Below are positions 18,559 through 53,108 of a stretch of 64,000 bases of DNA, in pieces (positions within the stretch are counted from its first letter, which is position 1; each line of letters starts with the position of its first letter). The translations under genes and the position numbers were made by a program. The notes under the pieces were generated by a model. That model was not told the origin of the DNA. It ran no database searches and was given only the letters and a program-made list of their open reading frames with translations. Where the stretch lies: positions 124,001-188,000 of the IMG/VR virus record IMGVR_UViG_3300035212_003113. The stretch is one strand, 5' to 3'.

Positions 18559-21500
18559 TTACACGTTACTGATGCAGTACCAGGCAGTGCTTATCCAGAC
18601 CCAAGTCTGCCCGCCACCAGCGGTCATCGTGCGCGCTACGCCGGTCGAAGGGGTTACCGTAGACCCGGCGCCCGAGATATTGACGAGCGAGATGGTGAGG
18701 CCGTCGTCGCTCACGGTCATCGCAGGGAGTGCCACTGCAGCTACGTTCACTGTGTAGGCGACGTTCGTGCGGAGGTTTGCTGCTGTTGGTGTTGCCGGAC
18801 AACTGCCCAGCGCCTTCACGCTGCTGGCCAGTTTGTCGAGAGCCGACCAGACCGTGGTGGGGTCAGGGTCGAGCCATTGGGTAGGCACCGTCGGCGTGTA
18901 CGCGAGCGAGCGCGAGTCGTCGAGGAAGTCGTAGGCGACGAGCGCGGAGACGGTGTACGTCGTCCCGGCAGCGGGGATCGGACTCCACGCAGGCGACACC
19001 GTGATGACCGTCCCGGTGTTGGACGAGACGGTGCGCGTCTGCCCCGATCCGGTTCCGCCCGTCAACGTGATCGTGCCGCCCACCCACTGATTTGTCGTGA
19101 ACGCCTTACTGGTGTCCGTGATCGTCGCAGATGCGCCCGCTGTTGCCGTTCCAGAACTCGTCGGGATGTTCAGCGGGCGCGCAGTGAGCACGCCGGTTGT
19201 CGTGCTGCGGCTGAACGCGAGCGTCGTGTACGACGTCGAGTCCATCTTGTAGCGAGCGCCGCCTCCAGAAGAACCGATCTGGTACCGCGAAGCCGGGATT
19301 CCCGTACCCGAATACACGCGGAACTGGTCGACGACCATTCCGAGGTAGGACGTCGAGGTCGATCCGGTGACACCGCCATTGTCGACGGTGCCGAGCATCG
19401 TGCGGTCGATGTCATAGATGCGGCAGCCGTCGATCTCACCGATGACCAGAGTCGGGCCGAGGGCTGCGCCAAGTGTTGAGTTATGGCACTTGAGCGTGAC
19501 GACACCTGACGGTGCTTTGTTCGCCGTGCCGATCAGCGAGTAGCCGGTGCTATTGGCAAGTGGCAGCAGCGGCGACCACGCGGGCGTGACCGTCAGCGTG
19601 TTCGCCGTGTTGGAAACGACCGTAGCCGTCTGGCCCGAACCTTGTCCTCCCGTCAGCGTGACCGTAGCACCAGCATACTGGTTGACCGTCCATGCCTTCG
19701 TCGTGTCTTGCAGGGTCGTGCTGCTCTGGGTGCCCGTGGCTTGGCCCGTGCCGAGGTTCCACGTCGACGGGCTGGAAGCGTAGGCGTAAGGCACCGCGCC
19801 GAGATAGGTGCGAACGAAGCCTGCCTCGCCGACGGTGCAGCCGTCGATCTCGATGACGCACGTCGGAAGACCGTTTGTCGTCGGGATCGTGTACGCGGTC
19901 GCGATAACCTGACCACCAATCAGGTTGGCCCGGTTCGCGTAGAAATTGAACTGCCCGTAGTTGGCATCCCAGTTTTGGCCGAGGTTCGATCCGGGGAAAG
20001 TCGGCTCGTTGAACAAGAGAGTGCTCAAGCCCGTGACCAACAGCGGATCAGAAGTCGCGTCGGCCTCGACACCGCCACCGACAGCACCCGTGATCTCGAA
20101 CGTCGTCAGCGCACCCGCACCAGTCCACGGCGCAGGGAAGCTCGCCCTGATAGACTGCATGTTCGATGCTGGGAAGTCGGCACGCACAGCAGCGAGCGTG
20201 ACGTTTCCGACGATCTGCACGCCGTTGCCGATCAACTGCACTCGCGCCCGCTTGAAGCCGAGTGTCACGTCACCGACGTAGCGCCCCGGCGCAAGCTGGA
20301 AGATCAGCTTCTCAGTGACGAACTGGCCGACGCTTGCGTTGTAGGTGGTGTTGCTGGGATCGCCAAGCGAAGGAACCTGCGAGTAGGCGTAGTTGATGCT
20401 CGCGTAGGGTTGGCCGAGCGTTCCGCCACCGGGGGCATCGGTGCCGTTGACCGGGTCGACGTAGACGGTGAGCGCCCCAGCGAAAACTGCGCCCGTTGCT
20501 GGCGCGCTCCACGCCACGCCAGTCGCTTGCGTGCTGTCGGCGGTGAGTACTTGACCGTTGGTGCCAACTGGGACACGAGTATTCGCGGTGCTGAAACCGA
20601 GAACGTCGCCCTTTGTCGTCAGCGGCGAAAGCGCGCCGAACGCTGCAGAGACAGTCGTCTGTCCTGTACCACCATTTAATACAGGAAGTATTCCTATTAT
20701 TTCACTAGGGCCGTCACCTAGATCAATAGGGGATGCAGGTGACTGCACTACGCCATCAATCACATGTATGACGCCTGTCCCGGATATTCCAAGGATAGTT
20801 GTCAACACATGGCTTGGATGACCATCTCCAAAATGGAAGGACACAGTGTGGCCAGCATCTGTGCATGTAGCTTCAAGCTCTACATAAACTCTGTCAGTTG
20901 ACAGCACAGTTGTTGATGAAAGCACAACAGAGCAAGTGTACTGTGTAATTGACCCAGGATTATATATAGGCGTTGGCTCTGAAGTAGTAAGAAGATTGGC
21001 GGTATATCCGTCATACTTATATACTTTTGCACGCATGTATGCTGCGCCGGGAAGGTCAACATCTGATGACGCCCATACGTTGAAGTCCCAGATTCCAGCT
21101 GGAATCACAGTTATCCCCGGAACATCAACTGCAGTCAAGAAGCCACCTACATAATCGTATACTCCTCCAGTTGACAGTACATTTGAAGTAAAGACCGTGT
21201 CTGCTGGATTTGATAAAAGAGTAAGTGCCTTAGTTGAATAAGGCGTAGACGGGAGTCCACCTAGTGGAGATTCTGCATCAGAACCGGCCTCCAGGAAGTA
21301 GGTCACTCCTCCACCGCCTCCAGAACCGCCGGATGCATTTGCTCCAGGAACCCAGGCGCTGCCGCTCCACGTAAGAACTTGCCCCGCTACTGGAGAAAGG
21401 CTGGACACCGCATTGCCGCGCAGTGCAATCACATCTGGAGAGAAAAGACTGCCCGACAGATCGCCGTCTACAGTAGATGATTTAATTGCGTCAATTGCAT

Positions 21501-22092
21501 CTTGAACATTCGTAACACCAAACGCAGGAGCAGCCAGCGAATCATCGTAGCTTATTCCATCTGCACTGTTAATGATTGCGGGCGGCACTACCCACGACAG
21601 GGCTCCATAACCATCATTGGCAAGCATCCCCTCCTCATCAATCGGCCAACCAGGAAAAGAGATATCAGGCGCAAGTCCTCCTGATGAAGCGAGTGGTGAT
21701 GTCGCTGTAACGCTCGACACTCCGCCACTGCCACCTCCCCCGCCGGACAACCACTTCAGCTCTCCGCTCTCGAATCCAAGGACCGCTCCCTCGAAATAAG
21801 CATTAGATGTCGAGAAGGAATCGGCAGATACGCCTGCGCCAGCATGGGTTGGGTTTACAAACTCGATGACTCGGATTACATTTAGTACTTTCCAGAGCCT
21901 GTATATCTCGCCACTTGGAGACTCCAGTTCTTTTAGAACGGTGGCTGTTAGTGAGCCAAAATCATTATACTCTAGCTCCGCGTACAAGTCTCTCTCTTCA
22001 CCAGGACGCAGCTTGACCCTGCCAAGAATATTAACATCTGACCTTGATATATTCCTTATTAAAAGTACTGGTTTTATCGGCGTAAAAGACAT
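18559..22092 (-). CDS. tail fibre / virion surface protein D (1177 aa, mosaic)
   Basis: Gly/Thr/Ser-rich; N-terminal ~120 aa paralogous to 22399..25647; fibre motifs GQVLTWSGSAW, LTTKGD, GTNGQVLTADST; YVDPVNGTD. Confidence 0.8.
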   Translation of the reverse strand: MSFTPIKPVLLIRNISRSDVNILGRVKLRPGEERDLYAELEYNDFGSLTATVLKELESPSGEIYRLWKVLNVIRVIEFVNPTHAGAGVSADSFSTSNAYFEGAVLGFESGELKWLSGGGGGSGGVSSVTATSPLASSGGLAPDISFPGWPIDEEGMLANDGYGALSWVVPPAIINSADGISYDDSLAAPAFGVTNVQDAIDAIKSSTVDGDLSGSLFSPDVIALRGNAVSSLSPVAGQVLTWSGSAWVPGANASGGSGGGGGVTYFLEAGSDAESPLGGLPSTPYSTKALTLLSNPADTVFTSNVLSTGGVYDYVGGFLTAVDVPGITVIPAGIWDFNVWASSDVDLPGAAYMRAKVYKYDGYTANLLTTSEPTPIYNPGSITQYTCSVVLSSTTVLSTDRVYVELEATCTDAGHTVSFHFGDGHPSHVLTTILGISGTGVIHVIDGVVQSPASPIDLGDGPSEIIGILPVLNGGTGQTTVSAAFGALSPLTTKGDVLGFSTANTRVPVGTNGQVLTADSTQATGVAWSAPATGAVFAGALTVYVDPVNGTDAPGGGTLGQPYASINYAYSQVPSLGDPSNTTYNASVGQFVTEKLIFQLAPGRYVGDVTLGFKRARVQLIGNGVQIVGNVTLAAVRADFPASNMQSIRASFPAPWTGAGALTTFEITGAVGGGVEADATSDPLLVTGLSTLLFNEPTFPGSNLGQNWDANYGQFNFYANRANLIGGQVIATAYTIPTTNGLPTCVIEIDGCTVGEAGFVRTYLGAVPYAYASSPSTWNLGTGQATGTQSSTTLQDTTKAWTVNQYAGATVTLTGGQGSGQTATVVSNTANTLTVTPAWSPLLPLANSTGYSLIGTANKAPSGVVTLKCHNSTLGAALGPTLVIGEIDGCRIYDIDRTMLGTVDNGGVTGSTSTSYLGMVVDQFRVYSGTGIPASRYQIGSSGGGARYKMDSTSYTTLAFSRSTTTGVLTARPLNIPTSSGTATAGASATITDTSKAFTTNQWVGGTITLTGGTGSGQTRTVSSNTGTVITVSPAWSPIPAAGTTYTVSALVAYDFLDDSRSLAYTPTVPTQWLDPDPTTVWSALDKLASSVKALGSCPATPTAANLRTNVAYTVNVAAVALPAMTVSDDGLTISLVNISGAGSTVTPSTGVARTMTAGGGQTWVWISTAWYCISNV

Positions 22093-22131
22093 GGTTCGCT
22101 CCCTCTAATTATTCTTTTCTGCAAAAAGCCC

Positions 22132-22374
22132 TCAAAATAAACCTAACTCAATGATAAGGTCCGCATCAGCAGAGCCATCCACTTGAAACAAAAAAAGCAA
22201 TATATGAGCAAGATTAACTCTGCGCAAATAGCTAGCGGCATCGGTCTCTGTGCCGATGGAAGTTAATTTCATTAATATCGCAGTATCACAAGCACTCACT
22301 GCATTAACTTCTAGCGGCGACATGGATAAAATGCCCTTTACCGCGACTACAGATACCCGGATGATTTTATTAAA
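22132..22374 (-). pseudogene. decayed duplicate of the C-terminal ~80 codons of the adjacent fibre gene
   Basis: AILMKLTSIGTETDAASYLRRVNLA...QVDGSADADLIIELGLF* aligns with [25 protein letters not shown]...[20 protein letters not shown]. Confidence 0.75.
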
Positions 22375-22398
22375 TCACTGCGGCATGCATCTGCCTTG

Positions 22399-25300
22399 CT
22401 AGTAGAGATCTATCTCTACAACGAGGTCCGCAGCCAACGACCCGTTGGAGCAATCGACCTGCACCGAGAGATAGTCGAATTGCGCGAAATCCACGCTGCG
22501 AAGGTAGCTGGTGGCGCTCGTTGAGGTACCACTTATCGTAGCCTTCATCAGTGTCGCGACGCCCGTATTACCCATGCCCGTTGTCGACTTGTTGATCGTG
22601 ACCGTGAGGTCTTCGCCGACGCCGCCTGCGGTGCGGATATTAATGAACATGCCTTGCAAAATCGTCTTCTGCTGAAAGCGATAAAATACTTCATCCGGGT
22701 CCATGCTGTTGACAAGTGTTCCAGGCCACAGGTAATGCTTACCGGAGTCGATATTACCCCGTACACAAAACTGAATCGTTGTCGGAGTGACGTAAGTGGT
22801 AAACGGGTGCGTGCAGGCAGTCTTTGTAACAAGATCGGTTCCCGGCCCTAGCTGTATGCCGTTTGTTCCGTTGCCTGCCTGTGGTGCGGACTGCAGAATG
22901 TCGCCGCCCGCGTACCGCTGCACCCACGTCAACGCTGCTGTTCCGACGAGGCCCGTGGTTGTACACTCCCAGCCTGTATACGCAAAGGTGCCGTCGTTGC
23001 AGAAGGTATATGCACCGAGCGCCTGGGAGCCCGATGCCATGTCGCCTGCACGCGTCCATGCACCTGCGGCAACGACGTAGATGCCGTTATCCACAGGGTT
23101 AGTTTGGCCAGTGGCAAGCACACGGTCACCGGCAACAAGGGCTACGCCTTGCAGCGTGTAGAGGCCAGTCAGCGCAGTGCTTGACGTTGTCACGACAACT
23201 GGCAGCTTTAGCTGTATTGCAGGATAAGGCGAACCTGCAATGCTTGTTGAGCGCGTCTGAATTTGCGAACCGCTATTCTCGACATAGACTCCGACATAGA
23301 GGCCCGTCGAGGTCGCGGTCGTCGGTGCCGCGACGTATATGTTGAGGTCGCGCGTCGAGAGCTGATTTCCTGCGCCCGTCGACGGCTGGTAGACGCCGAA
23401 CTTGTTGCCCGCGCCGTTGCTACGGACGTTGAGCGTGCTGCCCTTCAAGCAGTTGAACGAGAACGTCGCGACGTTGAGAGCACCCGTGCCGTTAGAGAGC
23501 ACCCCGTAGACGTTCGTCGTCGTGCCAACAGCGAGGCCGCTGTTGTCAACGGTGAGGACCGACGTGCGAAGTTTGCTCGTCACGCTCGTCGTGCCGGGGA
23601 GCGCGATGCCGACGAGATTCGTCGTCGCGTTCGCTGAGTTGAGCGTGAGGCTCAAGTCCTCGACACGCGTGTTCTCGCCCATCGTCAGCAACGTGACCGT
23701 GCCGCCGGGGTTGCTCGCGCTCATCACGATCCGCGTCGTCTGCAACGACATGCCGCGCAGTGAACAGTTGGCTGGGATCGTGAGGCCCGTCGTCGCCGAC
23801 GCGAGCGTATACGTCCCCGGCATGATCCACACGCTTACGCCTGTGAGGGAGTTCGTGTTAATATGCGAGATTGCGGCTTCGACGGTGAGGAACGGCGGAC
23901 CGTTCACGGTGCCCGTCGCGTCGTTGCCGTTCACGCCGTCCACGATCAGTACGTTGCCGAGCTTCGGAGTCAGCGCGCCGCTCGGAAGAGCGATTGCGAC
24001 ATTCGACGCGCTCGTGATGCGGCCCTTAGCGTCAACAGCTATCTGAGCAACGCTGGTGCTGCTACCATAAGTATTAGCTGCAACACCCGTCGTTGTCAGC
24101 GTTGGGTTCGGATACGTATCGGTGAGGTCACCACCAGCAGGACCGCTTGGCGGGAGACTTGTTGGAGGCGCAGGGAACGCGATTGGGGTCGTCGTCGCGG
24201 TGGTGACGTGGCCCTTCGCGTCCACGGTGACCTGCGCGACGTTGGTGCCGTCGCCGTAGGTACCTGCGACGACGCCGCTGGCGTTGTGGGAGACGACCGG
24301 GTTCGCTCCTGTCGTCACGTTGATCGGGGCGGTGCCGGTGACTGACTGGATCGGAGCCGCCGGGAACGCGATGGCGACTTCCGTCGCCGACGTGACGCGA
24401 CCCTTCGTATCGACGGCGACCTGTGCGACGTGCGTACCGTCGCCGTAGGTGGTCGCGACGACTCCCGTCGTCGTGAGCGTTGGGTTCGGATAGCTGCCAG
24501 TCAGATCGCCACCCGCTGGGCCGTTCGGCGGAAGGCTCGTCGGAGGTGCGGGGAACGCAATAGGGGTAGTCGTTGCCGAGGTGACATGCCCCTTGGCATC
24601 GACCGTGAGCCTCGCGCTATTCGTACCGTCACCGTAGGTGGCAGCCACGACACCGCTCGCATCATGACTGACGGTCGGGTTCACACCCGCAGTGACGCTG
24701 ATAGGAGCAGTACCAGTGACCGATTGAATCGGTGAGGAGGGGAACGCAATCGCAACGCTACTCGCGCTCGTGACACGACCCTTGGCGTCGACCGTGACCT
24801 GAGCAACGCTGGTGCCGCTGCCATAGGTATTAGCGGCAACCCCTGTTGTCGTCAGCGTTGGGTTCGGGTAGGTGCCCGTGAGATCGCCGCCGGCGCTTCC
24901 GTTCGGAGGGATGCTTGCTGGAAATGATATCGGAGTTGTCGTCGCCGAGGTGATGCGACCTTTTGCGTCGACCGTCAAACTAGCACTATTTGTGCCGTCG
25001 CCATAGGTATTTGCGACCACACCTGTTGCCGTAAGTGTCGGATTTGGATAAGTCCCAGAGAGATCCCCTCCAGCAGAACCCAATGGAGGCAGTGCAGCTG
25101 GAAATGATATCGGCTCATTGCTTGCACTTGTAATTATGCCTTTTTCACTTACGGTCAGTATGGGCACAGTTGCGCCGTTGCCATAGGTACCTGCAACTAC
25201 TCCGCTATCCTGAATACTTATATTTGGCGTTACTCCGCCTGTAGATGATAGCGGGTTCGATGCACTCACGCCTGATACGCCTACTGTCGCGCCGCCGGCA

Positions 25301-25647
25301 AGCCACTTTAATCCGCCGCTTTCAAAACCTAGTACAGCTCCTTCGAAATAGCTATTTGTTGTTTGAATAGCGCTTGCAACTAATCCATCGCCTTGGTAAG
25401 ATGGATTTATAAAGTTAATTACTTCAATCTTTCTATATATCTTCCACAGAAGATAGATCTCTCCTGCCGGAGCCTCGAGCTCTCTTAGTATTGTGCTGGT
25501 AAGAGGAGATCCATACTCTTTATATTCTAGCCGACTATAAAGATCAACAATTTCCCCTGGTCTTATCTTTACTTTTCCAAGTAGATTGACATCAGATTTA
25601 GTTATATTCTTTACAGTAAATATCGGAAATACCGGATCAGTCCTCAT
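22399..25647 (-). CDS. tail fibre / virion surface protein C (1082 aa) with repetitive shaft
   Basis: Seven TYG-x8-VDAKGRxTSA-type repeats, GDRVL...NGIY fibre module, globular C-terminus. Confidence 0.85.
23985..25285 (-). repeat. intragenic tandem repeat, seven ~60-codon units with two linker types
   Basis: GGDLxxxYPNPTL linker x4 and VTGTAPI/VSASNPL linker x3, each followed by GVxAxTYG...VDxKG. Confidence 0.85.
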
Positions 25648-25666
25648 GAGTCGCCCCCTCTTCTAC

Positions 25667-28600
25667 TCACTTCAGCGGCTCTAGTAATAGCTCTAATGCT
25701 GCCAGTCTGGCTTCTAGATCCTGATTCTTCTGATGCAGCTCCTGGCATGCCTTTACGACGACGGGAAATAGTCGCAGTGGGGTTGCCTCTAATCTATCTG
25801 GATTATCTTTTAGGGCCAGGCCCATCCACTCCGCATTAGCAGCAGTCTGCGCGGCGTCGAGTTCCTGCGCAATGAATCCGCCCTCAAACTTTTCCTGCTT
25901 CTTGCTGCCGTCAGACACCCCCGGTGTCTGGCCGATAACATTGCCTTCGTCGTCGAGGACTGGAGAGGAGTACCACTCACGGCGGTCCCATTTGAACTGC
26001 ACAGGGCGCACGGTCGAGAGAAAATCTATGCCGAGCGAAATGTCTTGGATGTCAGCCTTGTCGCGCGCGTCGGAGATCAGCGTGATCGTGTTAACTGCGC
26101 AACGCAGCGTCGTCACCGACGAGTTGCCAAGCGTGATCTGATTTGTCGCACTAACGGCAGTCGGAGTCGCGCCATTTCCGATACAAGTCAGGTTCGTTCC
26201 TGATAGAAAAGCGACGCCGCCTGCCGTCTGCCCGAGCACGGTGTTCGTGATCTGCGAGCCCAGCCCTCTTCCGACGTTCAAGCCGTTGATCAGCGCATCA
26301 CCGCCTTGAACATCAAGCGTGGCCGCAGGGTTGACGTTCCCGCCAGTCGCATTTACCAGTACCCTGTTGTTTGACGTATCTACTGCAAATATGCGTACTG
26401 AACCGGCTGCATTTTGTACCTGAAATGCAGTGGTATTGCCCGTATTCGCTCTGGCTATAACAGAGCCAGCGATTCCAGCGTTCGCTCTTGCTCCTGCGAC
26501 AATCACTACGTCGCCGCCGTTTGTGTTTCCTACTGCTGCACCGGCTTGAGCAGTCAGAGTGATACTTGTTCCGTTGCCAGACCCGGCCGTGCCACCTGCC
26601 ACTTGCAGCGGCCCTGTAGGCGTCGACGTACCGACTCCGAGCCGTGAGTTCGTGTTATCCCAGAACAGCCTAGCATTATTCTGCGAATAGATGCCTGATG
26701 CGCCAGCGAAAACAACGCTGCCTAGGGTGAACGCGGTTGCCGTTCCCGTGCCGCCGTTCGCTGCACTGACCGTGCTCCATGAAAACGTGCCCGACCCGTT
26801 GTTCGTCAATACGCCCGAAGCGTTCGCTGCCGGGAACGTCGTCGTCTGACCCCGGATGGCGACGATGTCGCCATCCGCGCTGACTTGAAACTGACCCGTC
26901 GTGCCGACGTTGAGCGTCGATGACAACGTGCGCGAACTGGAGGCCACCGTCGTCGTCGTGTAATAGCCAGACGGGAGTGTCAGCCCGCCGTTCACTATCG
27001 TTGGCGTCGCCAAGATGGCAAAATTTGTGGGAGCTAGCAGAGCCGACGCCAGTGTGTTTCCGGTGACGCCCGTTCCGTACCGAACCATGACCGAGCTAGC
27101 AGTGTTCACGTCTCTGACGACGGTTCCAGCCGGGACAAACAGGTCAAACGACGCCTCAACGGTACACACTGCTGTCGTGGTCAGGGAAATAGTCGTACTG
27201 CCGAGCGTGAGAACGCCGCTGAACGTGACCGCAGGGACAAAGCCAATGCCCAACCGGTTGTTCGTGTCGTCCCAGAATAGGTTGTTGTTGTCCTGCGTAT
27301 AGACACCCGACGCGCCAGCGAAGACAACGCTGCCGAGGGTCAACGCAGGGCCGCTCGGTGCAGTTGCCCATGACAGATTGCCTGCACCATCATTAACAAG
27401 AGCTCCTACTGCATCTGGAGTAGGGAACCCGCGATCCAATACGCCGCCGCCTAGTAACTCGTAAGAAGATGCAGTTATCCTGCCGCCATTTGAAATAGTT
27501 ACTTGAGGAATTCCCGTCTCAGAAATATTGAGATAGCCGTCATCAATATTTACTCCTATGGACCAGTCTGCTGGAAATGCAGACTCGCTAAGTTTAGAGA
27601 CCAGGTGCAGGGACGTTGGGCCGAAATACCCATCTGCCCAGCGGTTTGCGTATGACCCTATTTCATATGCAAGATCGGTATCAGGAATGAGCGAGGCATT
27701 TATAGACGTAGTTGTGAGATTACTAAGTGCTCTGTTGGCTATGCTGGCATCGTCTATAGTATCAAGCGCACTCTGAACAGTGGTGTCCGCTGGAGACAAT
27801 ATGCCATTAAAGCTAGCTGTGTCAGTGTATATCGCACTCGCCGGATGATCTGGATCAAGTAGCCCAGAAAGATTACCGTGATCGCTTATCTGATTTATTG
27901 GCAACGAAGAGACTTTGCGCAAGTCTACGTAATTTGCGCCTGTATCGGTGGACACAATTCTACCTTTTATGGCATTTGTATAGGCATTTGCTGTTTGATA
28001 TATAACTGTGCCAATTATCACTATCTCTGCGAATGGCAGACCCGACAGCGTAGCAAGCTCGGTTGTAGCTCCGGAGCGGGCCGCACTTATGTTGTTGTAT
28101 TCGTTTATGCCCTGTATTGCTATAATTGGATGATTTATGTCATTTGTTGCAAAGACATGCACTAGCACGAAATTGCCGCTTGTCAGCTCTGTTAGCTGCC
28201 ACGTAGAGCCGGTCCACTGATTATAAGGAAGCCTCCCGCCAGCACCTGTATAGCCCGCAGTTCCAGAATAGATTATAGGAAATGTGTCGGCCGTCTTACT
28301 TCTCCAATTACCGGAGACTCCCTCTCTAAAGAAAACCGGTATGCTGGCAATTGGAGCAAGCTCCTGGGGGGCACCATCTGTTATTATATGCTTTATGTCT
28401 TCGTCATAAAACATGCCATTTCCGGCAGAAAACTGGCCATGAATTGCGCTGTCTCCGGCGCCGTCAACATTGAAATCGCTTAGTGCGAATCCATTTATAA
28501 AAGCAGCGCCCATGCTATTATGTAGCCACAGGTGCGTTCCGCCGTCCATGACAAGACCATGACGCTCATCTGCAACGTATATCGCCTTGTTGTTTCCGGC

Positions 28601-28912
28601 GTCCCAGTATACGATTGATACGATTGCATAGGATAAAATCAAGTCATCTGAAAATGTTTGTGTGGTCTCTAGCGTGTAGCCATCAAAATAAAAAAACCAC
28701 AGCCCCTCTGTGTCTGTTATAGAAGCAGATGCAGCGGACAGATGAGTATATTTCACTCCTTGTGCATAGTACTCGAAACGAGATGATGTCGGGGTAATCG
28801 TAAGAGTGCGACTTGTGTCATCAAACGACAGCGTCGTGTCGGCTCTGTTGGGAAAACCGGTTGGCTCCTTGGACATCTCATATATTGTCTTTACGTTTGG
28901 ATTGTGCGACAT
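25667..28912 (-). CDS. tail fibre protein B with C-terminal S74 intramolecular chaperone
   Basis: ISDARDKADI...GIDFLSTVRPVQFKW...GFIAQE...VVKACQEL coiled coil; LFWDxTNxRLGxG repeats. Confidence 0.9.
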   Translation of the reverse strand: MSHNPNVKTIYEMSKEPTGFPNRADTTLSFDDTSRTLTITPTSSRFEYYAQGVKYTHLSAASASITDTEGLWFFYFDGYTLETTQTFSDDLILSYAIVSIVYWDAGNNKAIYVADERHGLVMDGGTHLWLHNSMGAAFINGFALSDFNVDGAGDSAIHGQFSAGNGMFYDEDIKHIITDGAPQELAPIASIPVFFREGVSGNWRSKTADTFPIIYSGTAGYTGAGGRLPYNQWTGSTWQLTELTSGNFVLVHVFATNDINHPIIAIQGINEYNNISAARSGATTELATLSGLPFAEIVIIGTVIYQTANAYTNAIKGRIVSTDTGANYVDLRKVSSLPINQISDHGNLSGLLDPDHPASAIYTDTASFNGILSPADTTVQSALDTIDDASIANRALSNLTTTSINASLIPDTDLAYEIGSYANRWADGYFGPTSLHLVSKLSESAFPADWSIGVNIDDGYLNISETGIPQVTISNGGRITASSYELLGGGVLDRGFPTPDAVGALVNDGAGNLSWATAPSGPALTLGSVVFAGASGVYTQDNNNLFWDDTNNRLGIGFVPAVTFSGVLTLGSTTISLTTTAVCTVEASFDLFVPAGTVVRDVNTASSVMVRYGTGVTGNTLASALLAPTNFAILATPTIVNGGLTLPSGYYTTTTVASSSRTLSSTLNVGTTGQFQVSADGDIVAIRGQTTTFPAANASGVLTNNGSGTFSWSTVSAANGGTGTATAFTLGSVVFAGASGIYSQNNARLFWDNTNSRLGVGTSTPTGPLQVAGGTAGSGNGTSITLTAQAGAAVGNTNGGDVVIVAGARANAGIAGSVIARANTGNTTAFQVQNAAGSVRIFAVDTSNNRVLVNATGGNVNPAATLDVQGGDALINGLNVGRGLGSQITNTVLGQTAGGVAFLSGTNLTCIGNGATPTAVSATNQITLGNSSVTTLRCAVNTITLISDARDKADIQDISLGIDFLSTVRPVQFKWDRREWYSSPVLDDEGNVIGQTPGVSDGSKKQEKFEGGFIAQELDAAQTAANAEWMGLALKDNPDRLEATPLRLFPVVVKACQELHQKNQDLEARLAALELLLEPLK

Positions 28913-28928
28913 ATTTACTCCACCCTGA

Positions 28929-31900
28929 TCAGATTATCCACCAAGCGCTGCCATCCGATTGAATCTTTATTGCTTCATACTGTGTGCTGAGCGTGTATGT
29001 TGTCGCGCCGTCTATTAGTTCGGACGCATCAGCATCTACGGTGACAATATTCGCCGTGATGTCTTTTTTCTTTATAGTAAATATGCGTTCGACTGCTGAT
29101 GCAGCGGATGGCAGCGTCATCGTTATTGCGCCGGAAGAAGCATCGGCCAAAATTGTGCCATCGGAAGAGGCCAGAGTATAATTGGCAGTTTTGGTTGAAA
29201 TCGGCGCAGTGCTGTTCTGTGCGGCGCCCGAGGTCCATGACAGAGTTCCGCTTCCATTGTTTGTTAGAATAGAATTTGCAGAGCCCTGAGATGATGGGAA
29301 GCTATATGGGATATCGTTTATTCTAGTTAGATCCCCGCTAGAGCTTACCTGGAACTGCGAGCTGGCGCCGACGGATAGCGCCGAAGCTGGCGCGTTCGTA
29401 CCGACACCGACACGCGCATTCGTCGTGTCGACGTCGAAGATGGTCGAGCCCGCTGCGTTCTGCACCGAGAATGCGGTCGTGCCGTCCGACGTGTTCCTCG
29501 AGAGCACGACGCCGTCGTTGCCGACGCTGAAAGTGGTCGTGCCGTTATCACGGGCAAGGAAGATTGGATCGCCCTTGTCCATGTTGTCTGCTATCAGCGC
29601 CGCTGAGGCGTTGACCGTAGGCTGCGACGCGCCTGTGGTCTGCAAAGCGAACAGGCCGCCGATGCGGATACCGCTGTTGTTCTTCGCCATGCCCGTGACG
29701 GCTATGTTGGCACCAGTGCCGTCGCCTGTTGTGTTGCCGAAGACGGCGTAGTTGCGGGCGCCGTTCGACGCGAGGCCCATCATACCGATGTTGTGGCCAG
29801 ATGCCGTCGTGCCCGCAGCCGAGCCTTGCAGCGCGAAGTTGGCTTGTAGCGCCGAGACGGGGTCTTGTCCGCTGCCTGCGATCACGGTGCCGAAGCTGCC
29901 CGCGTAAGAAGTTGACGGCGTACCTGCGCCGCTCAAATAACCGATAACGCCGTAGACCGGGGCGACGACGCTCGCAGATACGCTTCCTTCAATGTACGAA
30001 ACGATGGTTCCGCCGCCAGGGGTCAGGGTTGCGTCGACGTTCAGCGCGTACACGCCACTGGCCGTCGAGCCTGCCTGCACGTCGACGACGTGCGCCGGAG
30101 TTGCTATGCCTACGCCTAGGCGATTATTTGAATCGTCCCAGTACAGGTTGGAATCCGATGATAGCGATGAAGTGCCGCTCCAAAATGCCACGCGCGTAGC
30201 TACGCCACTGCCTGTAACAGTACCTGCTGGTGACCATGACAGGTTGCCCGAGCCATCATTTGTCAGCGCGCCCGACGCATTCGCCGCCGGGAACGTCGTC
30301 GTCTGGCCCCGGATAGCGACAATGTCGCCCGAGGAATTAACTTGGAACTGAGAGGATGAGCCAACAGATAATAGCGATATAGGACTTGTAGTCCCTATGC
30401 CAACGCTCCCGGCATTTGTGATACGCACACGCTCAGTCGTTGAGCTGCCTAACGTAGTAAATCCATCAGTGCCGCTAGCAGTCGTGTGAAATTCAATTCG
30501 ACCGCCGCTCGCCGTCGACGTAAAAGCCTGCTCGGCCTTCATAGTCATCATCGCGCCGTAGTTAATGCCGCCCGTGGCAGTCCAACCTGCACCGAGCACA
30601 TTGATCATGCCGTCGCCAGCGCCGATCTGCGTCGGCGCGGCCTTCGTTCCTCTCGAACGCACACCGGCAAACTGACCACCGCGATATGACTCTTGAAGCA
30701 CGGTTCCAGCGGCGCCGTGCCCAAGCATCACCGCGCCTGCTGTCACGTCAGAACTGTCAAACGTAAACTGCCCGTATACAGTCGACGTTCCAACCAGAAA
30801 CACGGGCGATCCGCCCGACTGCTGGAAGCGCGCGATCTCCGTGCCGTTGACGCCGACACCGATAATATCGTTCGACGGCGAGAAGAAGCCGCTGTTCAGG
30901 TTGTCGCGGAAGGCGACGGCGGGAGCGGCGGCGCTACCATCGGGGATGGCGAGTTGGCCGCTGGCGATGTCAAGGGCGGCAACGGGGGCGTTGGTGCCGA
31001 TACCCAGTTTACCGCTGCCCGTGTTGTCCCAATAGAGGTTCGCATTCGACGACAGCGACGAAGCGCCATCCCAGAATGCCACACGCGTTGCAGTACCGCT
31101 GCCGGTGACCGTGCCACTTCCGCCCGCCGCAGCCCACGACACGTTGCCGGCGCCGTCTGTCGTGAGTACTTCACCGCTCGCGCCGTCTATCATTGGAAGG
31201 GTAAATGCATCGCTTATATTTACCGGAGTGGTGACGGAACCGATGGTTACCCCAGTTGTTAAATAATAGGCCGAATTATTTCCTATTTTAATTGGTCCGC
31301 CATCATTATCAATCCACAGCGGCTTCTCAATCGGATACTCGTTATTGGTATAGCGAAGCGAAAGACCAGGCGAGAATCCAAGTGACCCCTGAAGCTGTAG
31401 GAGTGCAGTGTCGTCGGTAGCGCCGAGCTTAAGATAAAGCGCAGGGTCGCCCAGATCTAGACCGAGTGCAGCCTCGTTGCCCCCTATAGAAGGGACCAAC
31501 GGCCCCGCCACAAATCGGGCATACTGACTGGATAAAATTCCTTCTACTCCAAGATTCTCGACTACCACTGCTCCAGTAGTCAGCCACTTCAAGGCAGAGC
31601 TGCCGTCAAAAACTCCTGCATTGCTAAATTGAATCGCCCGATCTGGACCGCCTGGTGCGCCACTTGCAGGCGAATCCCACGATAGATTTCCGGCTCCATC
31701 GTTCGTTAATACAGTTCCGGCAGAGCCCACGGCCGCAGGCCAGGCCGCATCAACGCCTCCAGACCCCAGAAACAAGGTTCCTATTGCAGAAATCTGAATG
31801 TCAGCAAAGCTTGACAGCGATATATTTTCTGTGCCAGAGACAGAAAACTCGCCATTCCCGGAATCCGTTGTAATCGTGTTGCCCGACTCATAAGCAGCCT

Positions 31901-32216
31901 GTAAGCTAGAGCTAGCAGAGGAAAGAAGGGCAAGTAGGCTGTCAACACTTATTTTATTTAACTCTGTAGAGGCATAATCTATGTACGCAATGTAGCCGTC
32001 TAGCAGCGGTGGTACTATTGGAGCCACCAGGAATTCGCCATAAAAGTAGCCATCTGCCGAGCCGGACAACCCCTGATATGACCCACCATCCAGTGAAAGC
32101 TCTATTCGGCCAAGGTCGTAGTTATACCTAATTATGGCCATACCGGCTTCTGGAACGCCTAGACCCTCGCCCGCCCTAAAGGTCAGAAAAGGAATTGTTT
32201 GTTTTTTCTGCGTCAT
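28929..32216 (-). CDS. tail fibre / virion surface protein A
   Basis: GAGGAG RBS before ATG 32216; repeated LTxDGxGNxSW, ERVRITNAGSVGIGT; C-terminal TKTANYTL...SDGSAWWII domain. Confidence 0.85.
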   Translation of the reverse strand: MTQKKQTIPFLTFRAGEGLGVPEAGMAIIRYNYDLGRIELSLDGGSYQGLSGSADGYFYGEFLVAPIVPPLLDGYIAYIDYASTELNKISVDSLLALLSSASSSLQAAYESGNTITTDSGNGEFSVSGTENISLSSFADIQISAIGTLFLGSGGVDAAWPAAVGSAGTVLTNDGAGNLSWDSPASGAPGGPDRAIQFSNAGVFDGSSALKWLTTGAVVVENLGVEGILSSQYARFVAGPLVPSIGGNEAALGLDLGDPALYLKLGATDDTALLQLQGSLGFSPGLSLRYTNNEYPIEKPLWIDNDGGPIKIGNNSAYYLTTGVTIGSVTTPVNISDAFTLPMIDGASGEVLTTDGAGNVSWAAAGGSGTVTGSGTATRVAFWDGASSLSSNANLYWDNTGSGKLGIGTNAPVAALDIASGQLAIPDGSAAAPAVAFRDNLNSGFFSPSNDIIGVGVNGTEIARFQQSGGSPVFLVGTSTVYGQFTFDSSDVTAGAVMLGHGAAGTVLQESYRGGQFAGVRSRGTKAAPTQIGAGDGMINVLGAGWTATGGINYGAMMTMKAEQAFTSTASGGRIEFHTTASGTDGFTTLGSSTTERVRITNAGSVGIGTTSPISLLSVGSSSQFQVNSSGDIVAIRGQTTTFPAANASGALTNDGSGNLSWSPAGTVTGSGVATRVAFWSGTSSLSSDSNLYWDDSNNRLGVGIATPAHVVDVQAGSTASGVYALNVDATLTPGGGTIVSYIEGSVSASVVAPVYGVIGYLSGAGTPSTSYAGSFGTVIAGSGQDPVSALQANFALQGSAAGTTASGHNIGMMGLASNGARNYAVFGNTTGDGTGANIAVTGMAKNNSGIRIGGLFALQTTGASQPTVNASAALIADNMDKGDPIFLARDNGTTTFSVGNDGVVLSRNTSDGTTAFSVQNAAGSTIFDVDTTNARVGVGTNAPASALSVGASSQFQVSSSGDLTRINDIPYSFPSSQGSANSILTNNGSGTLSWTSGAAQNSTAPISTKTANYTLASSDGTILADASSGAITMTLPSAASAVERIFTIKKKDITANIVTVDADASELIDGATTYTLSTQYEAIKIQSDGSAWWII

Positions 32217-32401
32217 ATGCTCCTCAGCGCCAGGGGATCCAGCCCAATACAATGCACGGAGAACCATAGTTATTAAATGCGGGTGGTCCGCGAGCATTAA
32301 TTATATTTGCGTCAGATCGCAAACAAGCCGCGACCGCCGGCTGCAACTGAAGGCAACTAATTGAATAACAGTCTTTCTGATCTTTTCACATGGAGCAAAT
32401 A

Positions 32402-45687: not shown

Positions 45688-46449
45688 ATGAGCTATGCAG
45701 ATGGATATTGTTACTGGCCAGTTGATTATTCTATTATTCCGTCTGCGGCAGATGGCGTACTCTTGACAAAGTCTTCAAAGACCGAGGGCGCGCGAGCAGT
45801 TGTCGACGCAAGCTGGCAGGTGCCGGCTACAGCAACGCAGCTTCACAAGGTTAATCAAGGGGCGCATGCTTCTGCCGCAGATCTTGTAGAGCAGCAGATA
45901 GTTGGCATACGCAACGGCGCCAGTATTGATCTATATAAGATAGATTTTGTCAGTAAGCATAGGCCAGATCATGATCTGCATGATCGCGTAGATATGCTTG
46001 TGCTATCCGGTCTAATTAGCAAAGAGGTTCGCACGCTGACGTACTGGACTGACTTTGACGCAGAACTGATTCTACCTAAAACAGCTGCATCCAGCAGACT
46101 TTTTGTAGAAGATCTGCTTAAGCCGAAGGTAGTGGTAGTGGGAGGAGATGCCGTCGCCCAGCAGAACTCGACTGTTATTGTAGCGAGTACTGCAAAGCAT
46201 TCTTGGCCAGCCGTCAAAAAAGATCAGGATGATCTTGTAAGAATGGAGGCGACGGAGGATGGTGAGTGGAAATTTTGGTCGATTTGGAAAAATGGACCAC
46301 GGGTTTACTATCACCATGGACGTATCGGAGAGCCCTCTGGAAATGAGGGCGTCTACGTGGGCAGCTCAGTCCGAGCAGGCGGAGGAGCTGACACCTTTAT
46401 GCAACGCAAAATTGCAGAAAAGGTACGCAAAGGGTATGTAAAAGTGTGA
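45688..46449 (+). CDS. hypothetical protein with C-terminal WGR domain
   Basis: KFWSIW...YHHGRIG...KIAEKVRKGY. Confidence 0.75.
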   Translation: MSYADGYCYWPVDYSIIPSAADGVLLTKSSKTEGARAVVDASWQVPATATQLHKVNQGAHASAADLVEQQIVGIRNGASIDLYKIDFVSKHRPDHDLHDRVDMLVLSGLISKEVRTLTYWTDFDAELILPKTAASSRLFVEDLLKPKVVVVGGDAVAQQNSTVIVASTAKHSWPAVKKDQDDLVRMEATEDGEWKFWSIWKNGPRVYYHHGRIGEPSGNEGVYVGSSVRAGGGADTFMQRKIAEKVRKGYVKV

Positions 46450-46745: not shown

Positions 46746-46750
46746 TTCCC

Positions 46751-46778: not shown

Positions 46779-46856
46779 CTGCTATTAAATGGACAGCTGT
46801 ATTTTGTCTGCAGTTTAAGGCCACTGGATCTAGCTTGCAGAGTAGGAGTATAATTC

Positions 46857-47444: not shown

Positions 47445-47494
47445 CTGGTCTGCTCGGAATATGACCCAGCTTCTAATGAGAAGGGCTAGGCGCA

Positions 47495-48158: not shown

Positions 48159-48669
48159 GCGAGCAGCGGAATCAGCATTCGCTCTACTCTCCGCAAGGCG
48201 TCAGCTACAGGCAGGCAGTGGAAAGTTTACGCACAAATGCAGCTGTCCTCATCCTGCCCATAAAGGTGGCAGCGAGAAGACGGCTAGTTTTTACTTTAGC
48301 CGTGACACAGGGCAATTCTTCTGCTTTGGCTGCAACATATATGGCAACGCTTTTGATCTAATCTCTTTGCTGGGAGGCAGCAGCGACAATGCTCTTGATG
48401 CCGCAATGCAACAGGGACCTATTGCGATACCAGAGACGCCAAACATTCAAAAGCTAATTGGCGATCACAGCAGAAAACTAGTCAAGAAGTGTAGAAGTAA
48501 GCTGGCGGCCGCGGTGGGCGGATCAACCTGGGAAGCAGACTTTAAGTGGATGCAGGACTTCTATTGTAAGCTCGACAAGATACTTCCAGAGCTAGAGGAC
48601 GAATCGGCAGAGCAGATTCATGGACGGTTTCTCCAGTTCAACATGGAGCTAAACAGGAGATTTAAGTGA
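48097..48669 (+). CDS. stand-alone primase-type CHC2 zinc-binding domain protein
   Basis: CPHPAH...EKTASF...FFCFGC...GNAFDL; no TOPRIM domain; start uncertain. Confidence 0.8.
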   Translation: MQNGRVKFQQSNHQLKSLLSERAAESAFALLSARRQLQAGSGKFTHKCSCPHPAHKGGSEKTASFYFSRDTGQFFCFGCNIYGNAFDLISLLGGSSDNALDAAMQQGPIAIPETPNIQKLIGDHSRKLVKKCRSKLAAAVGGSTWEADFKWMQDFYCKLDKILPELEDESAEQIHGRFLQFNMELNRRFK

Positions 48670-51844: not shown

Positions 51845-51849
51845 GTTAT

Positions 51850-51876
51850 AAGGCCGGCTATTAATGCCGGCCTTTT
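51850..51876 (+). terminator. intrinsic terminator
   Basis: aaggccggc-tattaat-gccggcctttt. Confidence 0.8.
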
Positions 51877-51909
51877 ACTATGTAATGAGTATTTGCGAAG
51901 AGGAACGAC

Positions 51910-52227
51910 GTGGATGTGCTAGCCTTTATGCAGCCAGAGACTACCAATAGCCTTGCAGCTATAAAGATGCTGGGATTCGAAGGAGCCCAGCGCGCAGCAT
52001 TTGTTAGAGCTATGGCGTGTGTCAGTCCGCGAGAAGAGGCATTGCGATGCCTTAAACTCTCAAGATCGTACTTAAAGGATGCTCGTCTTTTTGAGTTCTC
52101 TAGCGGTCTTAATTCCAGATACCTGCTGCTTGCCAGTTTCTACAGAGTACTGGCTCACCGGGTTTATAGGGCAGCGGGCGCAGGCGAGGAAGGCATTCGG
52201 CAGGGATTCTTGAGAGTGGTGAAATGA
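51910..52227 (+). CDS. hypothetical protein
   Basis: GAGGA RBS, GTG start, ATGA coupling. Confidence 0.6.
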   Translation: MDVLAFMQPETTNSLAAIKMLGFEGAQRAAFVRAMACVSPREEALRCLKLSRSYLKDARLFEFSSGLNSRYLLLASFYRVLAHRVYRAAGAGEEGIRQGFLRVVK

Positions 52228-53108
52228 CTATTTCTAGCCTTATATTCGAAGAATCCGAGGACCAGATAATATCTGGCTTCCCTGTGCGCGTATCGATTCT
52301 AGCATCTGAAGCTTCTGCGATTATATATTTTACGACCGATGGTTCGTCTCCCGACCCACTGTCAAATGTGTATATTGAGCCGGTACTGCTGCCTACTGAT
52401 GGCTCCCCGTTTACCCTAAGCGCTATTGCCTATTCAGATGTCGATGGGTATTATGTCCCGAGTAGCATAATTACCTATACATGGACGCTTGACAATACGG
52501 CTTACTTTGAGCAGCGCAAGTCGCATAAAGCAGGAATAGCATATATATATCCAGGTGGCCAGGACATACCGTTTTGGTATGACTTCGAGGGAAATCCGGC
52601 CACATATATTGATGAAGATCCTTACTATATTCCTTTTCTAATTTCCGACCGAGACGCGCAAGGTCGCCCGCAGTCTAGCGCGTACAATAACGAGATCGCG
52701 GGTCCATCTAATACGGACATGTCATACCTGAGTACTCTTGGGTCTGACAACTTCAATCCTGATGCACACATAATAGTGATCGATACCCGCCCTGGATCCG
52801 AAAGGGCCCCATCGGTAACCGTTATAAACGGTCCGTACATGACGTTGCGCAATCCGGACCGGTACTACCGCGGTATAGATTACAGGGCTGTAGACGTATC
52901 GAATCACACGTCCGGTCAGCATATTCAGAGCTTTTATAACCGGAAGACCGGAACTCACGTAGCTTATTATTTTGATACCGTTGACGCCCGCTGGATAAAG
53001 TCTATAAGCTATGTTCCGGTTGTAGAAAACAAAGAGAGGCCGTTGCCAGTTTACCAGCGGCCGCTGGTTTTCCAGTGGAACCTTTTCGGCAGGTTCAATA
53101 CGTTCTAG
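52224..53108 (+). CDS. putative structural protein with CHB_HEX_C/Fn3-associated Ig-like N-terminal domain
   Basis: IYFTTDGSSP...YIEPV...TLSAIAY. Confidence 0.7.
   Translation: MTISSLIFEESEDQIISGFPVRVSILASEASAIIYFTTDGSSPDPLSNVYIEPVLLPTDGSPFTLSAIAYSDVDGYYVPSSIITYTWTLDNTAYFEQRKSHKAGIAYIYPGGQDIPFWYDFEGNPATYIDEDPYYIPFLISDRDAQGRPQSSAYNNEIAGPSNTDMSYLSTLGSDNFNPDAHIIVIDTRPGSERAPSVTVINGPYMTLRNPDRYYRGIDYRAVDVSNHTSGQHIQSFYNRKTGTHVAYYFDTVDARWIKSISYVPVVENKERPLPVYQRPLVFQWNLFGRFNTF

What the first reader, a model, noticed from the sequence alone, without database searches (positions are those of the whole stretch)
18559..53108. Recurrent DGY tripeptide in presumed outer virion proteins: candidate modification or docking motif
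By eye, DGY occurs twice in fibre D (NDGYG, YDGYT), three times in fibre B (FDGYT, ADGYF, DDGYL), twice in fibre A (ADGYF, LDGYI), and once each in 52224 (VDGYY) and 45688 (ADGYC). I did not spot it in fibre C, the enzymes or the 2,700-aa protein. All fibre copies lie in the lower-GC N-terminal halves. One converts the common NDGAGNLSW repeat into NDGYGALSW. Inference: a selected short linear motif, for example a Tyr O-glycosylation sequon for the phage GTs (Tyr-linked glycans are known in some S-layers) or an assembly signal.
Basis: partly seen in the sequence, partly recalled or inferred. Interest (0 to 1): 0.68.

Follow-up and report, generated by a model that had tools for sequence, protein, structure and literature searches.

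The report
Asp-Gly-Tyr motif enriched in phage tail
In this 372-kb freshwater jumbo phage the tripeptide Asp-Gly-Tyr occurs about eight times more often than chance in tail, fibre and baseplate proteins only, was gained repeatedly at different positions in this phage lineage and is then kept, which marks it as a selected surface motif whose function (possibly a tyrosine modification site) is still unknown.

Summary
Inside the window the excess is weak: 9 vs 2.6 expected, rank 16 of 8000 tripeptides; fibres alone 7 vs 0.81, Bonferroni P about 0.18. The whole 371,675-bp genome makes it strong. DGY occurs 56 times vs 16 expected. Of these, 46 (5.5 expected, P 7e-27, top-ranked tripeptide) lie in 55 tail/fibre/baseplate proteins. 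The other 387 ORFs are at expectation (10 vs 10.5) and the head block has none. Tail proteins outside the window replicate it (39 vs 4.6, P 5e-23). The motif is strict (NGY, EGY, DAY, DGF, DGW and the permutations are not enriched), acts at protein level, and is not explained by paralogy (56 sites collapse to 52). Diverse phage fibre loci show none (31 vs 30.9), but some relatives share it. Sites are kept among DGY-rich relatives (59% vs 25% background) and never match in DGY-poor ones (0 of 45). Orthologues carry DGY at different columns (8 in the sheath family). Tyr sits at hairpin turns. "Selected short motif" is supported; a Tyr-glycosylation sequon is untested, and GT co-occurrence does not support it. 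The sites in 45688 and 52224 look like chance.

The parts
18559..22092 (-). Fibre D (1177 aa): tail-fibre family member with 2 DGY
   Evidence: member of the 16-protein BLAST family with tail-fibre proteins. The C-terminal part is 73-76% identical to other phage contigs.
21607..21615 (-). DGY at fibre D residues 160-162 (NDGYGALSW, the Y variant of the NDGxGNLSW repeat)
   Evidence: Relative L116 has NDGYGNL and NDGYGAL at other copies of the repeat.
21004..21012 (-). DGY at fibre D residues 361-363 (YKYDGYTAN), the turn of a beta-hairpin
   Evidence: Seven homologues keep D/N-G but have V, S, T or I in place of Y. In the AF2 domain model D-G-Y-T is the turn between two strands, local pLDDT about 70.
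22399..25647 (-). Fibre C (1082 aa): same family, shares its N-terminus with fibre D, no DGY
25667..28912 (-). Fibre B (1081 aa): tailspike-like with a C-terminal S74 intramolecular chaperone domain; 3 DGY
   Evidence: Peptidase_S74; phrog_4636 tail spike.
28676..28684 (-). DGY at fibre B residues 77-79 (FYFDGYTLE)
   Evidence: Conserved as DGY in L114, L115 and L116 at 61-64% identity.
27626..27634 (-). DGY at fibre B residues 427-429 (WADGYFGP)
   Evidence: No aligned homologue found.
27533..27541 (-). DGY at fibre B residues 458-460 (IDDGYLNI)
   Evidence: No aligned homologue found.
28929..32297 (-). Fibre A (1122 aa): tail-fibre family member with 2 DGY
32046..32054 (-). DGY at fibre A residues 82-84 (SADGYFYG)
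   Evidence: Conserved in L116 (37% identity overall) and L114.
31992..32000 (-). DGY at fibre A residues 100-102 (LLDGYIAY)
   Evidence: Conserved in L116 and L114.
45700..45708 (+). DGY at residue 5 of ORF 45688-46449; probably a chance occurrence
   Evidence: The ORF has only a weak WGR hit and sits among metabolic genes. Non-tail proteins are at expectation.
52443..52451 (+). DGY at residue 74 of ORF 52224-53108 (CHB_HEX_C / Fn3-associated domain protein); probably chance, virion role unproven
33488..35389 (+). GT47 (exostosin-like) glycosyltransferase next to the fibre island: a candidate but unsupported 'writer'
   Evidence: No homologue beside the fibres in L114 or L116.
4004..5077 (+). 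Glycosyltransferase, paralogue of the GT that directly follows the tail module (genome 313990-315153)

Best explanation
Shown: DGY is a real, lineage-specific short motif that selection maintains on the tail apparatus (fibres, sheath outer region, baseplate proteins) of this freshwater jumbo phage and some relatives. It arises by point substitution of Tyr behind a pre-existing Asp-Gly (or x-Gly) turn, in many unrelated folds. It sits at hairpin turns or loop-to-strand junctions, is usually followed by a hydrophobic or beta-branched residue, and avoids the exchangeable C-terminal (distal) 30% of the proteins. Inferred mechanism, the one I commit to: DGY(V/I/L/T) is an acceptor or recognition site for a tyrosine-directed covalent modification made in the cytoplasm on tail proteins. 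Glycosylation by one of the phage's three glycosyltransferases is the leading candidate. Sites accumulate and turn over as sequons do on other viral surface proteins. I put the first layer (a selected motif) at about 0.85. The confidence given below is for the modification-site mechanism.
For: Enrichment: genome-wide 56 vs 16.0 expected, second of 8000 tripeptides. The tail set has 46 vs 5.5, P 7e-27, rank 1. The rest of the genome has 10 vs 10.5 and the head/packaging block 0 vs 0.99. Independent replication outside the window gives 39 vs 4.64, P 5e-23. Not composition: the five permutations occur 2-9 times, the local-composition expectation is 5.2, and Tyr usage is equal in tail and non-tail proteins. 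Not DNA-level: 56 copies in frame vs 10 in other sense frames and 13 antisense, with 15 different codon strings. Not paralogy: 56 sites collapse to 52. Strictness needing both the carboxylate and the phenol: NGY 1.0x, EGY 0.6x, DAY 0.2x, DSY 0, DGF 1.5x, DGW 0. Not generic to fibres: 31 vs 30.9 in 223,000 aa from 77 diverse fibre loci. Lineage trait: L031 9 vs 0.92, L116 8 vs 0.66, L032 7 vs 0.44, L114 5 vs 0.64, while L033 and L034 have 0 of 76 D-G followed by Y. Gain and maintenance: 13 of 22 conserved vs DGY-rich relatives (background 25%, P 8e-4), 0 of 45 vs DGY-poor relatives (background 15%, P 1e-3). Turnover: 8 distinct DGY columns in the sheath family vs 0-3 for permutations, all in the variable middle region. 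Exposure proxies: homologues have mostly polar or small residues at the Y column (13.2 vs 4.2 hydrophobic). The models put DGY in hairpin turns. For the modification idea: three GTs are encoded, one directly after the last tail gene. The pattern of an acidic residue upstream of the acceptor plus a hydrophobic residue after it (33 of 46, P 7e-6) resembles known bacterial sequons, D/E-X-N-X-S/T and D-(S/T)-(A/I/L/V/M/T) (my own knowledge, not tested here). Virion glycosylation by phage GTs is known in mycobacteriophages (cited in PMC12619734).
Against: There is no direct evidence of any modification. No Tyr-directed modification of a phage virion protein is known to me or turned up in the literature searches. 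The GT47 is not syntenic with the DGY-rich fibres in L114. A DGY-poor relative has six GT1 genes, and no GT was found on the (very incomplete) DGY-rich contigs. The genome has no Wzy_C oligosaccharyltransferase, sulfotransferase or Fic enzyme. The tail partition at 235-315 kb was drawn after seeing the data, although the BLAST-defined fibre family and the annotations support it independently. Both structure models are of low overall confidence and give no solvent accessibility. One tail sub-block (284-299 kb) has no DGY.
Confidence: 0.33

Rival explanations
1. An unmodified functional turn. The Asp-Gly turn presents an exposed Asp carboxylate next to a Tyr ring. This would be a minimal weak binding element for host surface polysaccharide or a metal ion, or for contacts between tail subunits. 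Many copies would give the tail multivalent, reversible adhesion.
For: The location is the same as for the best explanation: outer tail proteins and the variable middle region of the sheath, at turn positions. Homologues have polar residues there. It needs no unknown enzyme, which fits the lack of GT co-occurrence and the absence of other Tyr-directed enzymes.
Against: For sugar stacking or packing, Trp and Phe should serve as well as Tyr, and Asn-Gly as well as Asp-Gly. Yet DGW is 0 of 1.7 expected, DGF 1.5x and NGY 1.0x. DGY also avoids the distal C-terminal 30% of the fibres, where receptor binding is expected, though those parts may simply be recent imports.
Confidence: 0.27
2. An assembly or docking signal. 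DGY would be read by a tail-assembly chaperone or by the baseplate socket, marking proteins or protein ends for incorporation into the tail.
For: Eleven of 46 sites lie in the first tenth of the protein. Three paralogous fibres share ..DGYVLSR.G at residues 26-30, and protein 251815 has DGY at residues 11 and 27. The enrichment is tail-only, with none in head proteins.
Against: Most sites are internal and multiple (up to 6 per protein), they move between orthologues, and they also occur in the sheath's middle domains. A docking signal should be single and positionally fixed.
Confidence: 0.1
3. No motif-level function. The excess would be a by-product: hidden ancient repeats, a lineage-specific structural habit of beta-hairpins, or a post hoc statistical artefact.
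For: In the window alone it does not survive correction. D-G turns are generically common in fibre proteins (DGT and DGS are about 1.9x in control loci). BLAST may miss remote repeat homology.
Against: It replicates in unseen proteins at P 5e-23 and is the top-ranked tripeptide of 8000 in the tail set. Aligned orthologous columns show point substitutions (DGN, DGT, DGA to DGY), not shuffled modules. Conservation exceeds background within the lineage and falls below it outside. Control fibre loci show none.
Confidence: 0.3

Closest known systems
Virion glycosylation in mycobacteriophages (Freeman et al. 2023, as cited in PMC12619734)
   Same: Phage-encoded glycosyltransferases placed next to structural genes modify virion proteins in the cytoplasm. 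Here one GT directly follows the tail module.
   Different: As cited, glycans there sit at the C-termini of the capsid and tail tube subunits. Here the candidate acceptor would be Tyr in a strict DGY tripeptide spread over fibres, sheath and baseplate, with none in head proteins. No modification has been shown.
Bacterial general glycosylation sequons: Campylobacter D/E-X-N-X-S/T and Bacteroidota D-(S/T)-(A/I/L/V/M/T)
   Same: Short strict motifs with an acidic residue just upstream of the acceptor and, in Bacteroidota, a hydrophobic residue after it. They are found on many unrelated surface proteins. DGY followed by V/I/L/T has the same layout.
   Different: Those systems act in the periplasm with lipid-linked glycans and use Asn or Ser/Thr. 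Phage tails assemble in the cytoplasm, the acceptor would be Tyr, and the host is unknown. The comparison comes from my own knowledge and was not tested.
Tyrosine O-glycosylation of S-layer proteins (Paenibacillus alvei, Thermoanaerobacter; review PMC2943079)
   Same: Shows that Tyr can carry O-linked glycans in prokaryotic surface proteins.
   Different: Only two to four sites per S-layer protein. The glycan is thought to be transferred co-secretionally by a specific O-oligosaccharyltransferase. No Wzy_C homologue is in this genome. The review passages I read give no DGY-like consensus.
Sequon gain and loss on eukaryotic viral glycoproteins (N-X-S/T in HIV Env and influenza HA)
   Same: Motif density is under selection while individual positions turn over between lineages. 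That is the pattern seen here.
   Different: Different kingdom, chemistry and cell compartment. This is an analogy of evolutionary pattern only (my own knowledge).

Membership tests
Selected short linear motif (generic definition) | Occurs more often than composition, order-shuffled and look-elsewhere controls allow | tested here: met
   Tail set 46 vs 5.5, rank 1 of 8000, permutations 2-9. Genome-wide Bonferroni P about 5e-11. Window alone: not met.
Selected short linear motif (generic definition) | Independent origins rather than inheritance of one domain | tested here: met
   56 sites collapse to 52 after merging BLAST-aligned sites. There are 8 distinct columns in sheath orthologues. Aligned homologues read DGN, DGT, DSN, EGL or AGT.
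Selected short linear motif (generic definition) | Conserved above background where present | tested here: met
   13 of 22 (59%) vs 25% for other tripeptides in the same alignments, P 8e-4.
Selected short linear motif (generic definition) | Solvent-exposed position | tested here: inconclusive
   Two low-confidence AF2 models place DGY in hairpin turns. Homologues show polar residues at the Y column. No coordinates were available, so no accessibility could be computed.
Protein glycosylation sequon served by phage glycosyltransferases | A glycosyltransferase is encoded with, or next to, the target genes | tested here: met
   GT47 at window 33488-35389 beside fibre A. A GT1-family GT at genome 313990-315153 directly follows the last tail gene, and its paralogue is at window 4004-5077.
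Protein glycosylation sequon served by phage glycosyltransferases | The glycosyltransferase co-occurs with motif-rich relatives and is absent from motif-poor ones | tested here: not met
   No GT47 beside the fibres in L114 or L116. The DGY-poor record behind L020 has six GT1 genes, and none was found on the DGY-rich contigs, which are only 7-9% complete. A search for relatives of the tail-end GT found nothing.
Protein glycosylation sequon served by phage glycosyltransferases | Glycan demonstrated on the acceptor residue | not testable with these tools
   This needs mass spectrometry or glycan staining of virions or expressed proteins. The phage is known only from metagenomes.
S-layer-type Tyr O-glycosylation (oligosaccharyltransferase-dependent) | O-oligosaccharyltransferase with a Wzy_C domain | tested here: not met
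   No PF04932 match in the complete genome, while the control rang in 9 of 14 reference genomes. A host-encoded enzyme cannot be excluded.
S-layer-type Tyr O-glycosylation (oligosaccharyltransferase-dependent) | The target is exported before or while it is modified | not tested
   Tail proteins of tailed phages assemble in the cytoplasm (established knowledge). I did not analyse signal peptides.
Other Tyr-directed modifications (sulfation, AMPylation, oxidation to DOPA) | The matching enzyme is encoded (sulfotransferase, Fic, tyrosinase) | tested here: not met
   No Sulfotransfer_3 match and no Fic match. The tyrosinase search is uninformative because its control rang nowhere.

The most novel reading that the evidence does not exclude
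DGY followed by V/I/L/T is the sequon of a so far undescribed tyrosine-directed modification (for example O-glycosylation by a soluble phage glycosyltransferase). The modification would decorate the outer surface of the tail (fibre shafts, sheath outer domains, baseplate) in a clade of freshwater jumbo phages. Sites would be gained and lost as on eukaryotic viral glycoproteins, perhaps to shield or tune the tail surface.
Probability: 0.2. Interest if true: 0.9.

Novelty: new variant of a known kind. Interest (0 to 1): 0.62.

Why it matters
Strict three-residue motifs that pile up on one class of viral surface proteins and change position between relatives are the typical footprint of a modification sequon or a recognition element. 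No such motif has been described for phage tails, and no tyrosine-directed modification of a phage virion is known. If DGY marks a modification site, it would reveal a new layer of tail-surface chemistry in large environmental phages. It would also give a simple sequence signature for finding more such phages and for pairing them with the responsible enzyme. If the motif turns out to be an unmodified adhesive or contact turn, it would still be an unusually clear case of convergent motif evolution across unrelated folds of one molecular machine. The practical limit is that the phage is uncultured, so testing needs heterologous expression or environmental proteomics.

Tried and rejected
(1) Composition artefact: rejected. 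Per-protein and 60-residue local expectations are 5.5 and 5.2, the permutations occur 2-9 times, and Tyr usage is equal in tail and non-tail proteins.
(2) DNA-level motif (GAYGGNTAY): rejected. The signal is frame-specific and spread over 15 codon strings.
(3) Paralogy or repeat inheritance: rejected at BLAST sensitivity (56 to 52 sites) and by point substitutions in orthologous columns.
(4) Generic property of tail fibres or beta-hairpins: rejected. Control loci give 31 vs 30.9, whereas DGT and DGS are generic.
(5) Size effect: rejected. Large non-tail proteins have 4 vs 2.75.
(6) Close cultured relatives: none. The best is the Bacillus phage G sheath, 29% identity over 23% of the query.
(7) Host hint from the phage GroEL: nothing useful.
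(8) Relatives of the tail-end GT in viral contigs: none found.
(9) GT2 family in the genome: none.
(10) Wzy_C, sulfotransferase and Fic: none. The tyrosinase search was uninformative.
(11) Literature on a 'DGY motif', 'Asp-Gly-Tyr' or Tyr modification of tail fibres: nothing relevant. The primary Tyr-glycosylation paper (PMC4397588) is not held.
(12) The 'moraphage' paper (PMC12619734) may or may not cover this lineage (its genomes reach 307 kb) and says nothing about Tyr or DGY.
(13) AF2 models of the sheath and of a fibre D domain were of low overall confidence (pLDDT 53 and 46). I used only their local secondary structure.
(14) Read laying, complex prediction, the large protein searches and fold search were not used. 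They would not have answered the motif question.

Full report
**Context.** The window is bases 124001-188000 of a complete 371,675-bp virus record with direct terminal repeats. Its DNA occurs in lake and river water metagenomes from many studies. No cultured phage is close: the best is the Bacillus phage G tail sheath, at 29% identity over a quarter of the protein.

In the window, the four long minus-strand ORFs at 18559-32297 are tail-fibre or tailspike-like. Fibre B has a C-terminal S74 chaperone domain and a tailspike PHROG, and fibre C has virion-protein PHROGs. They form an island among replication and metabolism genes: helicase, ligase, thymidylate kinase, GroEL, RNase HII, GMP reductase, ClpP, SbcCD and a Cas4-like nuclease. 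Two glycosyltransferases are also there, a GT47 at 33488-35389 and another GT at 4004-5077.

**Observation.** The seven fibre copies lie in the lower-GC N-terminal halves. NDGYGALSW is the one Y variant among seven copies of the NDGxGxxSW repeat in fibres A, B and D.

Within the window the statistics are only suggestive. There are 9 observed vs 2.6 expected (P 1.5e-3, rank 16 of all tripeptides). The fibres have 7 vs 0.81 (P 2e-5, rank 4; about 0.18 after correcting for 8000 possible tripeptides). Outside the fibres the count is 2 vs 1.8. On window evidence alone the finding would be marginal.

**Whole genome.** I called 442 ORFs (112,397 aa) and found DGY 56 times against 16.0 expected. That makes it the second most enriched of 8000 tripeptides, after the N-terminal MKL. 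The excess is confined to one class of proteins:

| Protein set | ORFs | DGY observed | DGY expected |
|---|---|---|---|
| BLAST family linking the four window fibres to large proteins at 235-279 kb | 16 | 31 | 2.9 |
| Other ORFs of the 235-315 kb tail module (fibre proteins, sheath, baseplate wedge) | 39 | 15 | 2.6 |
| Remaining ORFs | 387 | 10 | 10.5 |
| Head/packaging block (terminase, portal, protease; included in the 387) | 23 | 0 | 0.99 |

In the combined tail set DGY is the top-ranked tripeptide (46 vs 5.5, P 7e-27). That is an independent replication.

**Controls.**
- The five other orderings of D, G and Y occur 2-9 times in the tail set. The local-composition expectation is 5.2, and Tyr usage is the same in tail (2.96%) and non-tail (3.06%) proteins.
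- The DNA pattern is frame-specific (56 in frame, 10 in other sense frames, 13 antisense) and uses 15 different codon strings.
- Merging sites that BLAST aligns to one another reduces 56 to 52.
- The motif is strict at every position: NGY 1.0x, EGY 0.6x, AGY 1.3x, DAY 0.2x, DSY 0, DGF 1.5x, DGW 0. DGT and DGS are raised equally in non-tail proteins, so they are generic.
- The residue after Tyr is hydrophobic or beta-branched in 33 of 46 cases (P 7e-6).
- In tail proteins 16% of all D-G dipeptides are followed by Tyr, against 2.3% elsewhere.

**Comparison with other phages.** In 77 loci around fibre homologues from diverse uncultured phages (223,000 aa), DGY is exactly at expectation (31 vs 30.9), so it is not a general property of tail fibres. 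Some relatives share the roughly tenfold excess: L031 9 vs 0.92, L116 8 vs 0.66, L032 7 vs 0.44, L114 5 vs 0.64. Others with homologous tail genes have none; in L033 and L034, 0 of 76 D-G are followed by Y.

Individual sites behave in a two-sided way. Against DGY-rich relatives, 13 of 22 aligned DGYs are conserved (59% vs 25% for other tripeptides, P 8e-4). Against DGY-poor relatives, 0 of 45 are conserved (vs 15%, P 1e-3). Where DGY is missing, the homologues mostly keep the D and the G and show T, A, S, Q, N or sometimes L or V in place of Y.

Orthologues carry DGY at different positions. The L031 sheath has four DGYs where this genome reads NGT, DTA, DGN and NSY, and this genome's two sheath DGYs fall where L031 has other residues. 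Across 13 sheath orthologues DGY occupies 8 distinct columns, against 0-3 for each permutation. All eight are in the variable middle region, none in the conserved core. L116 has independently converted two NDGxGNLSW repeats to NDGYG.

For the window's own sites: B77, A82 and A100 are conserved in relatives down to 37% identity. D361 is a conserved D-G turn with a lineage-specific Y. D160 has a parallel in L116. B427 and B458 have no aligned homologue.

**Structural context.**
- DGY avoids the C-terminal 30% of tail proteins (1 of 46; KS P 4e-4), and 11 of 46 sites lie in the first tenth. The C-terminal halves of the fibres have higher GC, and fibre D's is 73-76% identical to other phages' contigs. 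These distal parts therefore look like exchanged modules that have not accumulated the motif.
- An AF2 model of a fibre D domain (local pLDDT about 70) puts D-G-Y-T in the turn of a beta-hairpin. The turn varies in residue and length among homologues.
- A low-confidence sheath model puts D428-G429 in a hairpin turn with Y430 starting the next strand.

**Mechanism.** What is shown is a strict motif that is tail-specific and lineage-specific, that selection maintains, and that arises by point substitution behind pre-existing turns in many folds. What it does is inference.

I favour an acceptor or recognition site for a Tyr-directed modification made in the cytoplasm, with glycosylation as the leading candidate. 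The reasons are these:
- Both the Asp carboxylate and the Tyr hydroxyl seem to be required.
- The layout (acidic residue, acceptor, hydrophobic residue) resembles bacterial sequons.
- Sites turn over as sequons do.
- The genome encodes three glycosyltransferases, one directly after the last tail gene.

Against this stand several points:
- Nothing shows any modification.
- The GT47 is not next to the fibres in L114.
- A DGY-poor relative has six GT1 genes.
- No oligosaccharyltransferase, sulfotransferase or Fic enzyme is encoded.

The rivals are an unmodified binding or contact turn, an assembly or docking signal, and a functionless by-product. The last is disfavoured by the replication, the control loci and the conservation pattern.

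**Novelty and verdict.** Searches for 'DGY motif', 'Asp-Gly-Tyr' and Tyr modification of tail fibres found nothing relevant. The closest known things are mycobacteriophage virion glycosylation and bacterial or viral sequons. I rate this a new variant of a known kind: a sequon-like motif on viral surface proteins. The specific glycosylation mechanism remains open, and the two non-fibre sites (45688, 52224) are probably chance.

Noticed in passing
whole genome; for example genome 484, 959, 1572 ... and 335108-339236 (outside the window); window 37993 and 39173 (genome 161993, 163173): Fifty of 442 ORFs begin with Met-Lys-Leu, which makes MKL the most enriched tripeptide genome-wide (74 vs 10.7). 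Most are small ORFs that cluster at 0-107 kb and 335-339 kb, and several belong to paralogue families of 21 and 12 small proteins.
   Followed up: partly
genome 313990-315153 (L146:1030-2193) and window 4004-5077: A Glycos_transf_1-family glycosyltransferase lies directly after the last tail gene. It has a paralogue in the window's replication region. No relatives were found in viral contigs by the pattern scan.
   Followed up: partly
window 18559-32297 (fibres A-D): The C-terminal halves of the fibres have clearly higher GC than the N-terminal halves (fibre D 0.63 vs 0.52). Fibre D residues about 229-1093 are 73-76% identical to several other contigs. One of them is a roughly 110-kb, DGY-poor phage from the same sample as a fragment 100% identical to this phage. 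This points to exchange of distal fibre modules between co-occurring phages.
   Followed up: partly
L001:5087-5941 (genome 240087-240941) and L002:4405-5205 (genome 256215-257015): A thymidylate synthase and a patatin-like phospholipase are embedded inside the tail-fibre gene block.
   Followed up: no
genome 284000-299000 (L004): A tail-module sub-block of nine ORFs has no DGY at all (0 vs 0.65 expected). Its four largest proteins (714, 1579, 709, 708 aa) have no PHROG match. They may be internal tail parts, which would sharpen the contrast between outer and inner tail proteins.
   Followed up: no
window 54711-62807 and genome 341519-348712: Two giant ORFs (2,698 and 2,397 aa) have no DGY. The second is linked by BLAST to the fibre family yet lacks the motif.
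   Followed up: no
L007 (genome 202936-205338, minus strand): An 800-aa protein outside the tail module has cadherin-like repeats ending in VNDTP and carries two DGYs (LEDGYVAI, VNDGYVNS). It is a paralogue of the 1,096-aa ORF at genome 53010.
   Followed up: no
L055:10568-14305: An unrelated phage fibre homologue has a tandem repeat DDLDGYAQDIRSD that occurs twice, a separate small instance of DGY inside a repeat unit.
   Followed up: no
window 15026-16774: The phage encodes a GroEL-like chaperonin (PHROG E 2e-122) just upstream of the fibre island. It is too divergent to give a host hint by the pattern scan of genomes.
   Followed up: partly
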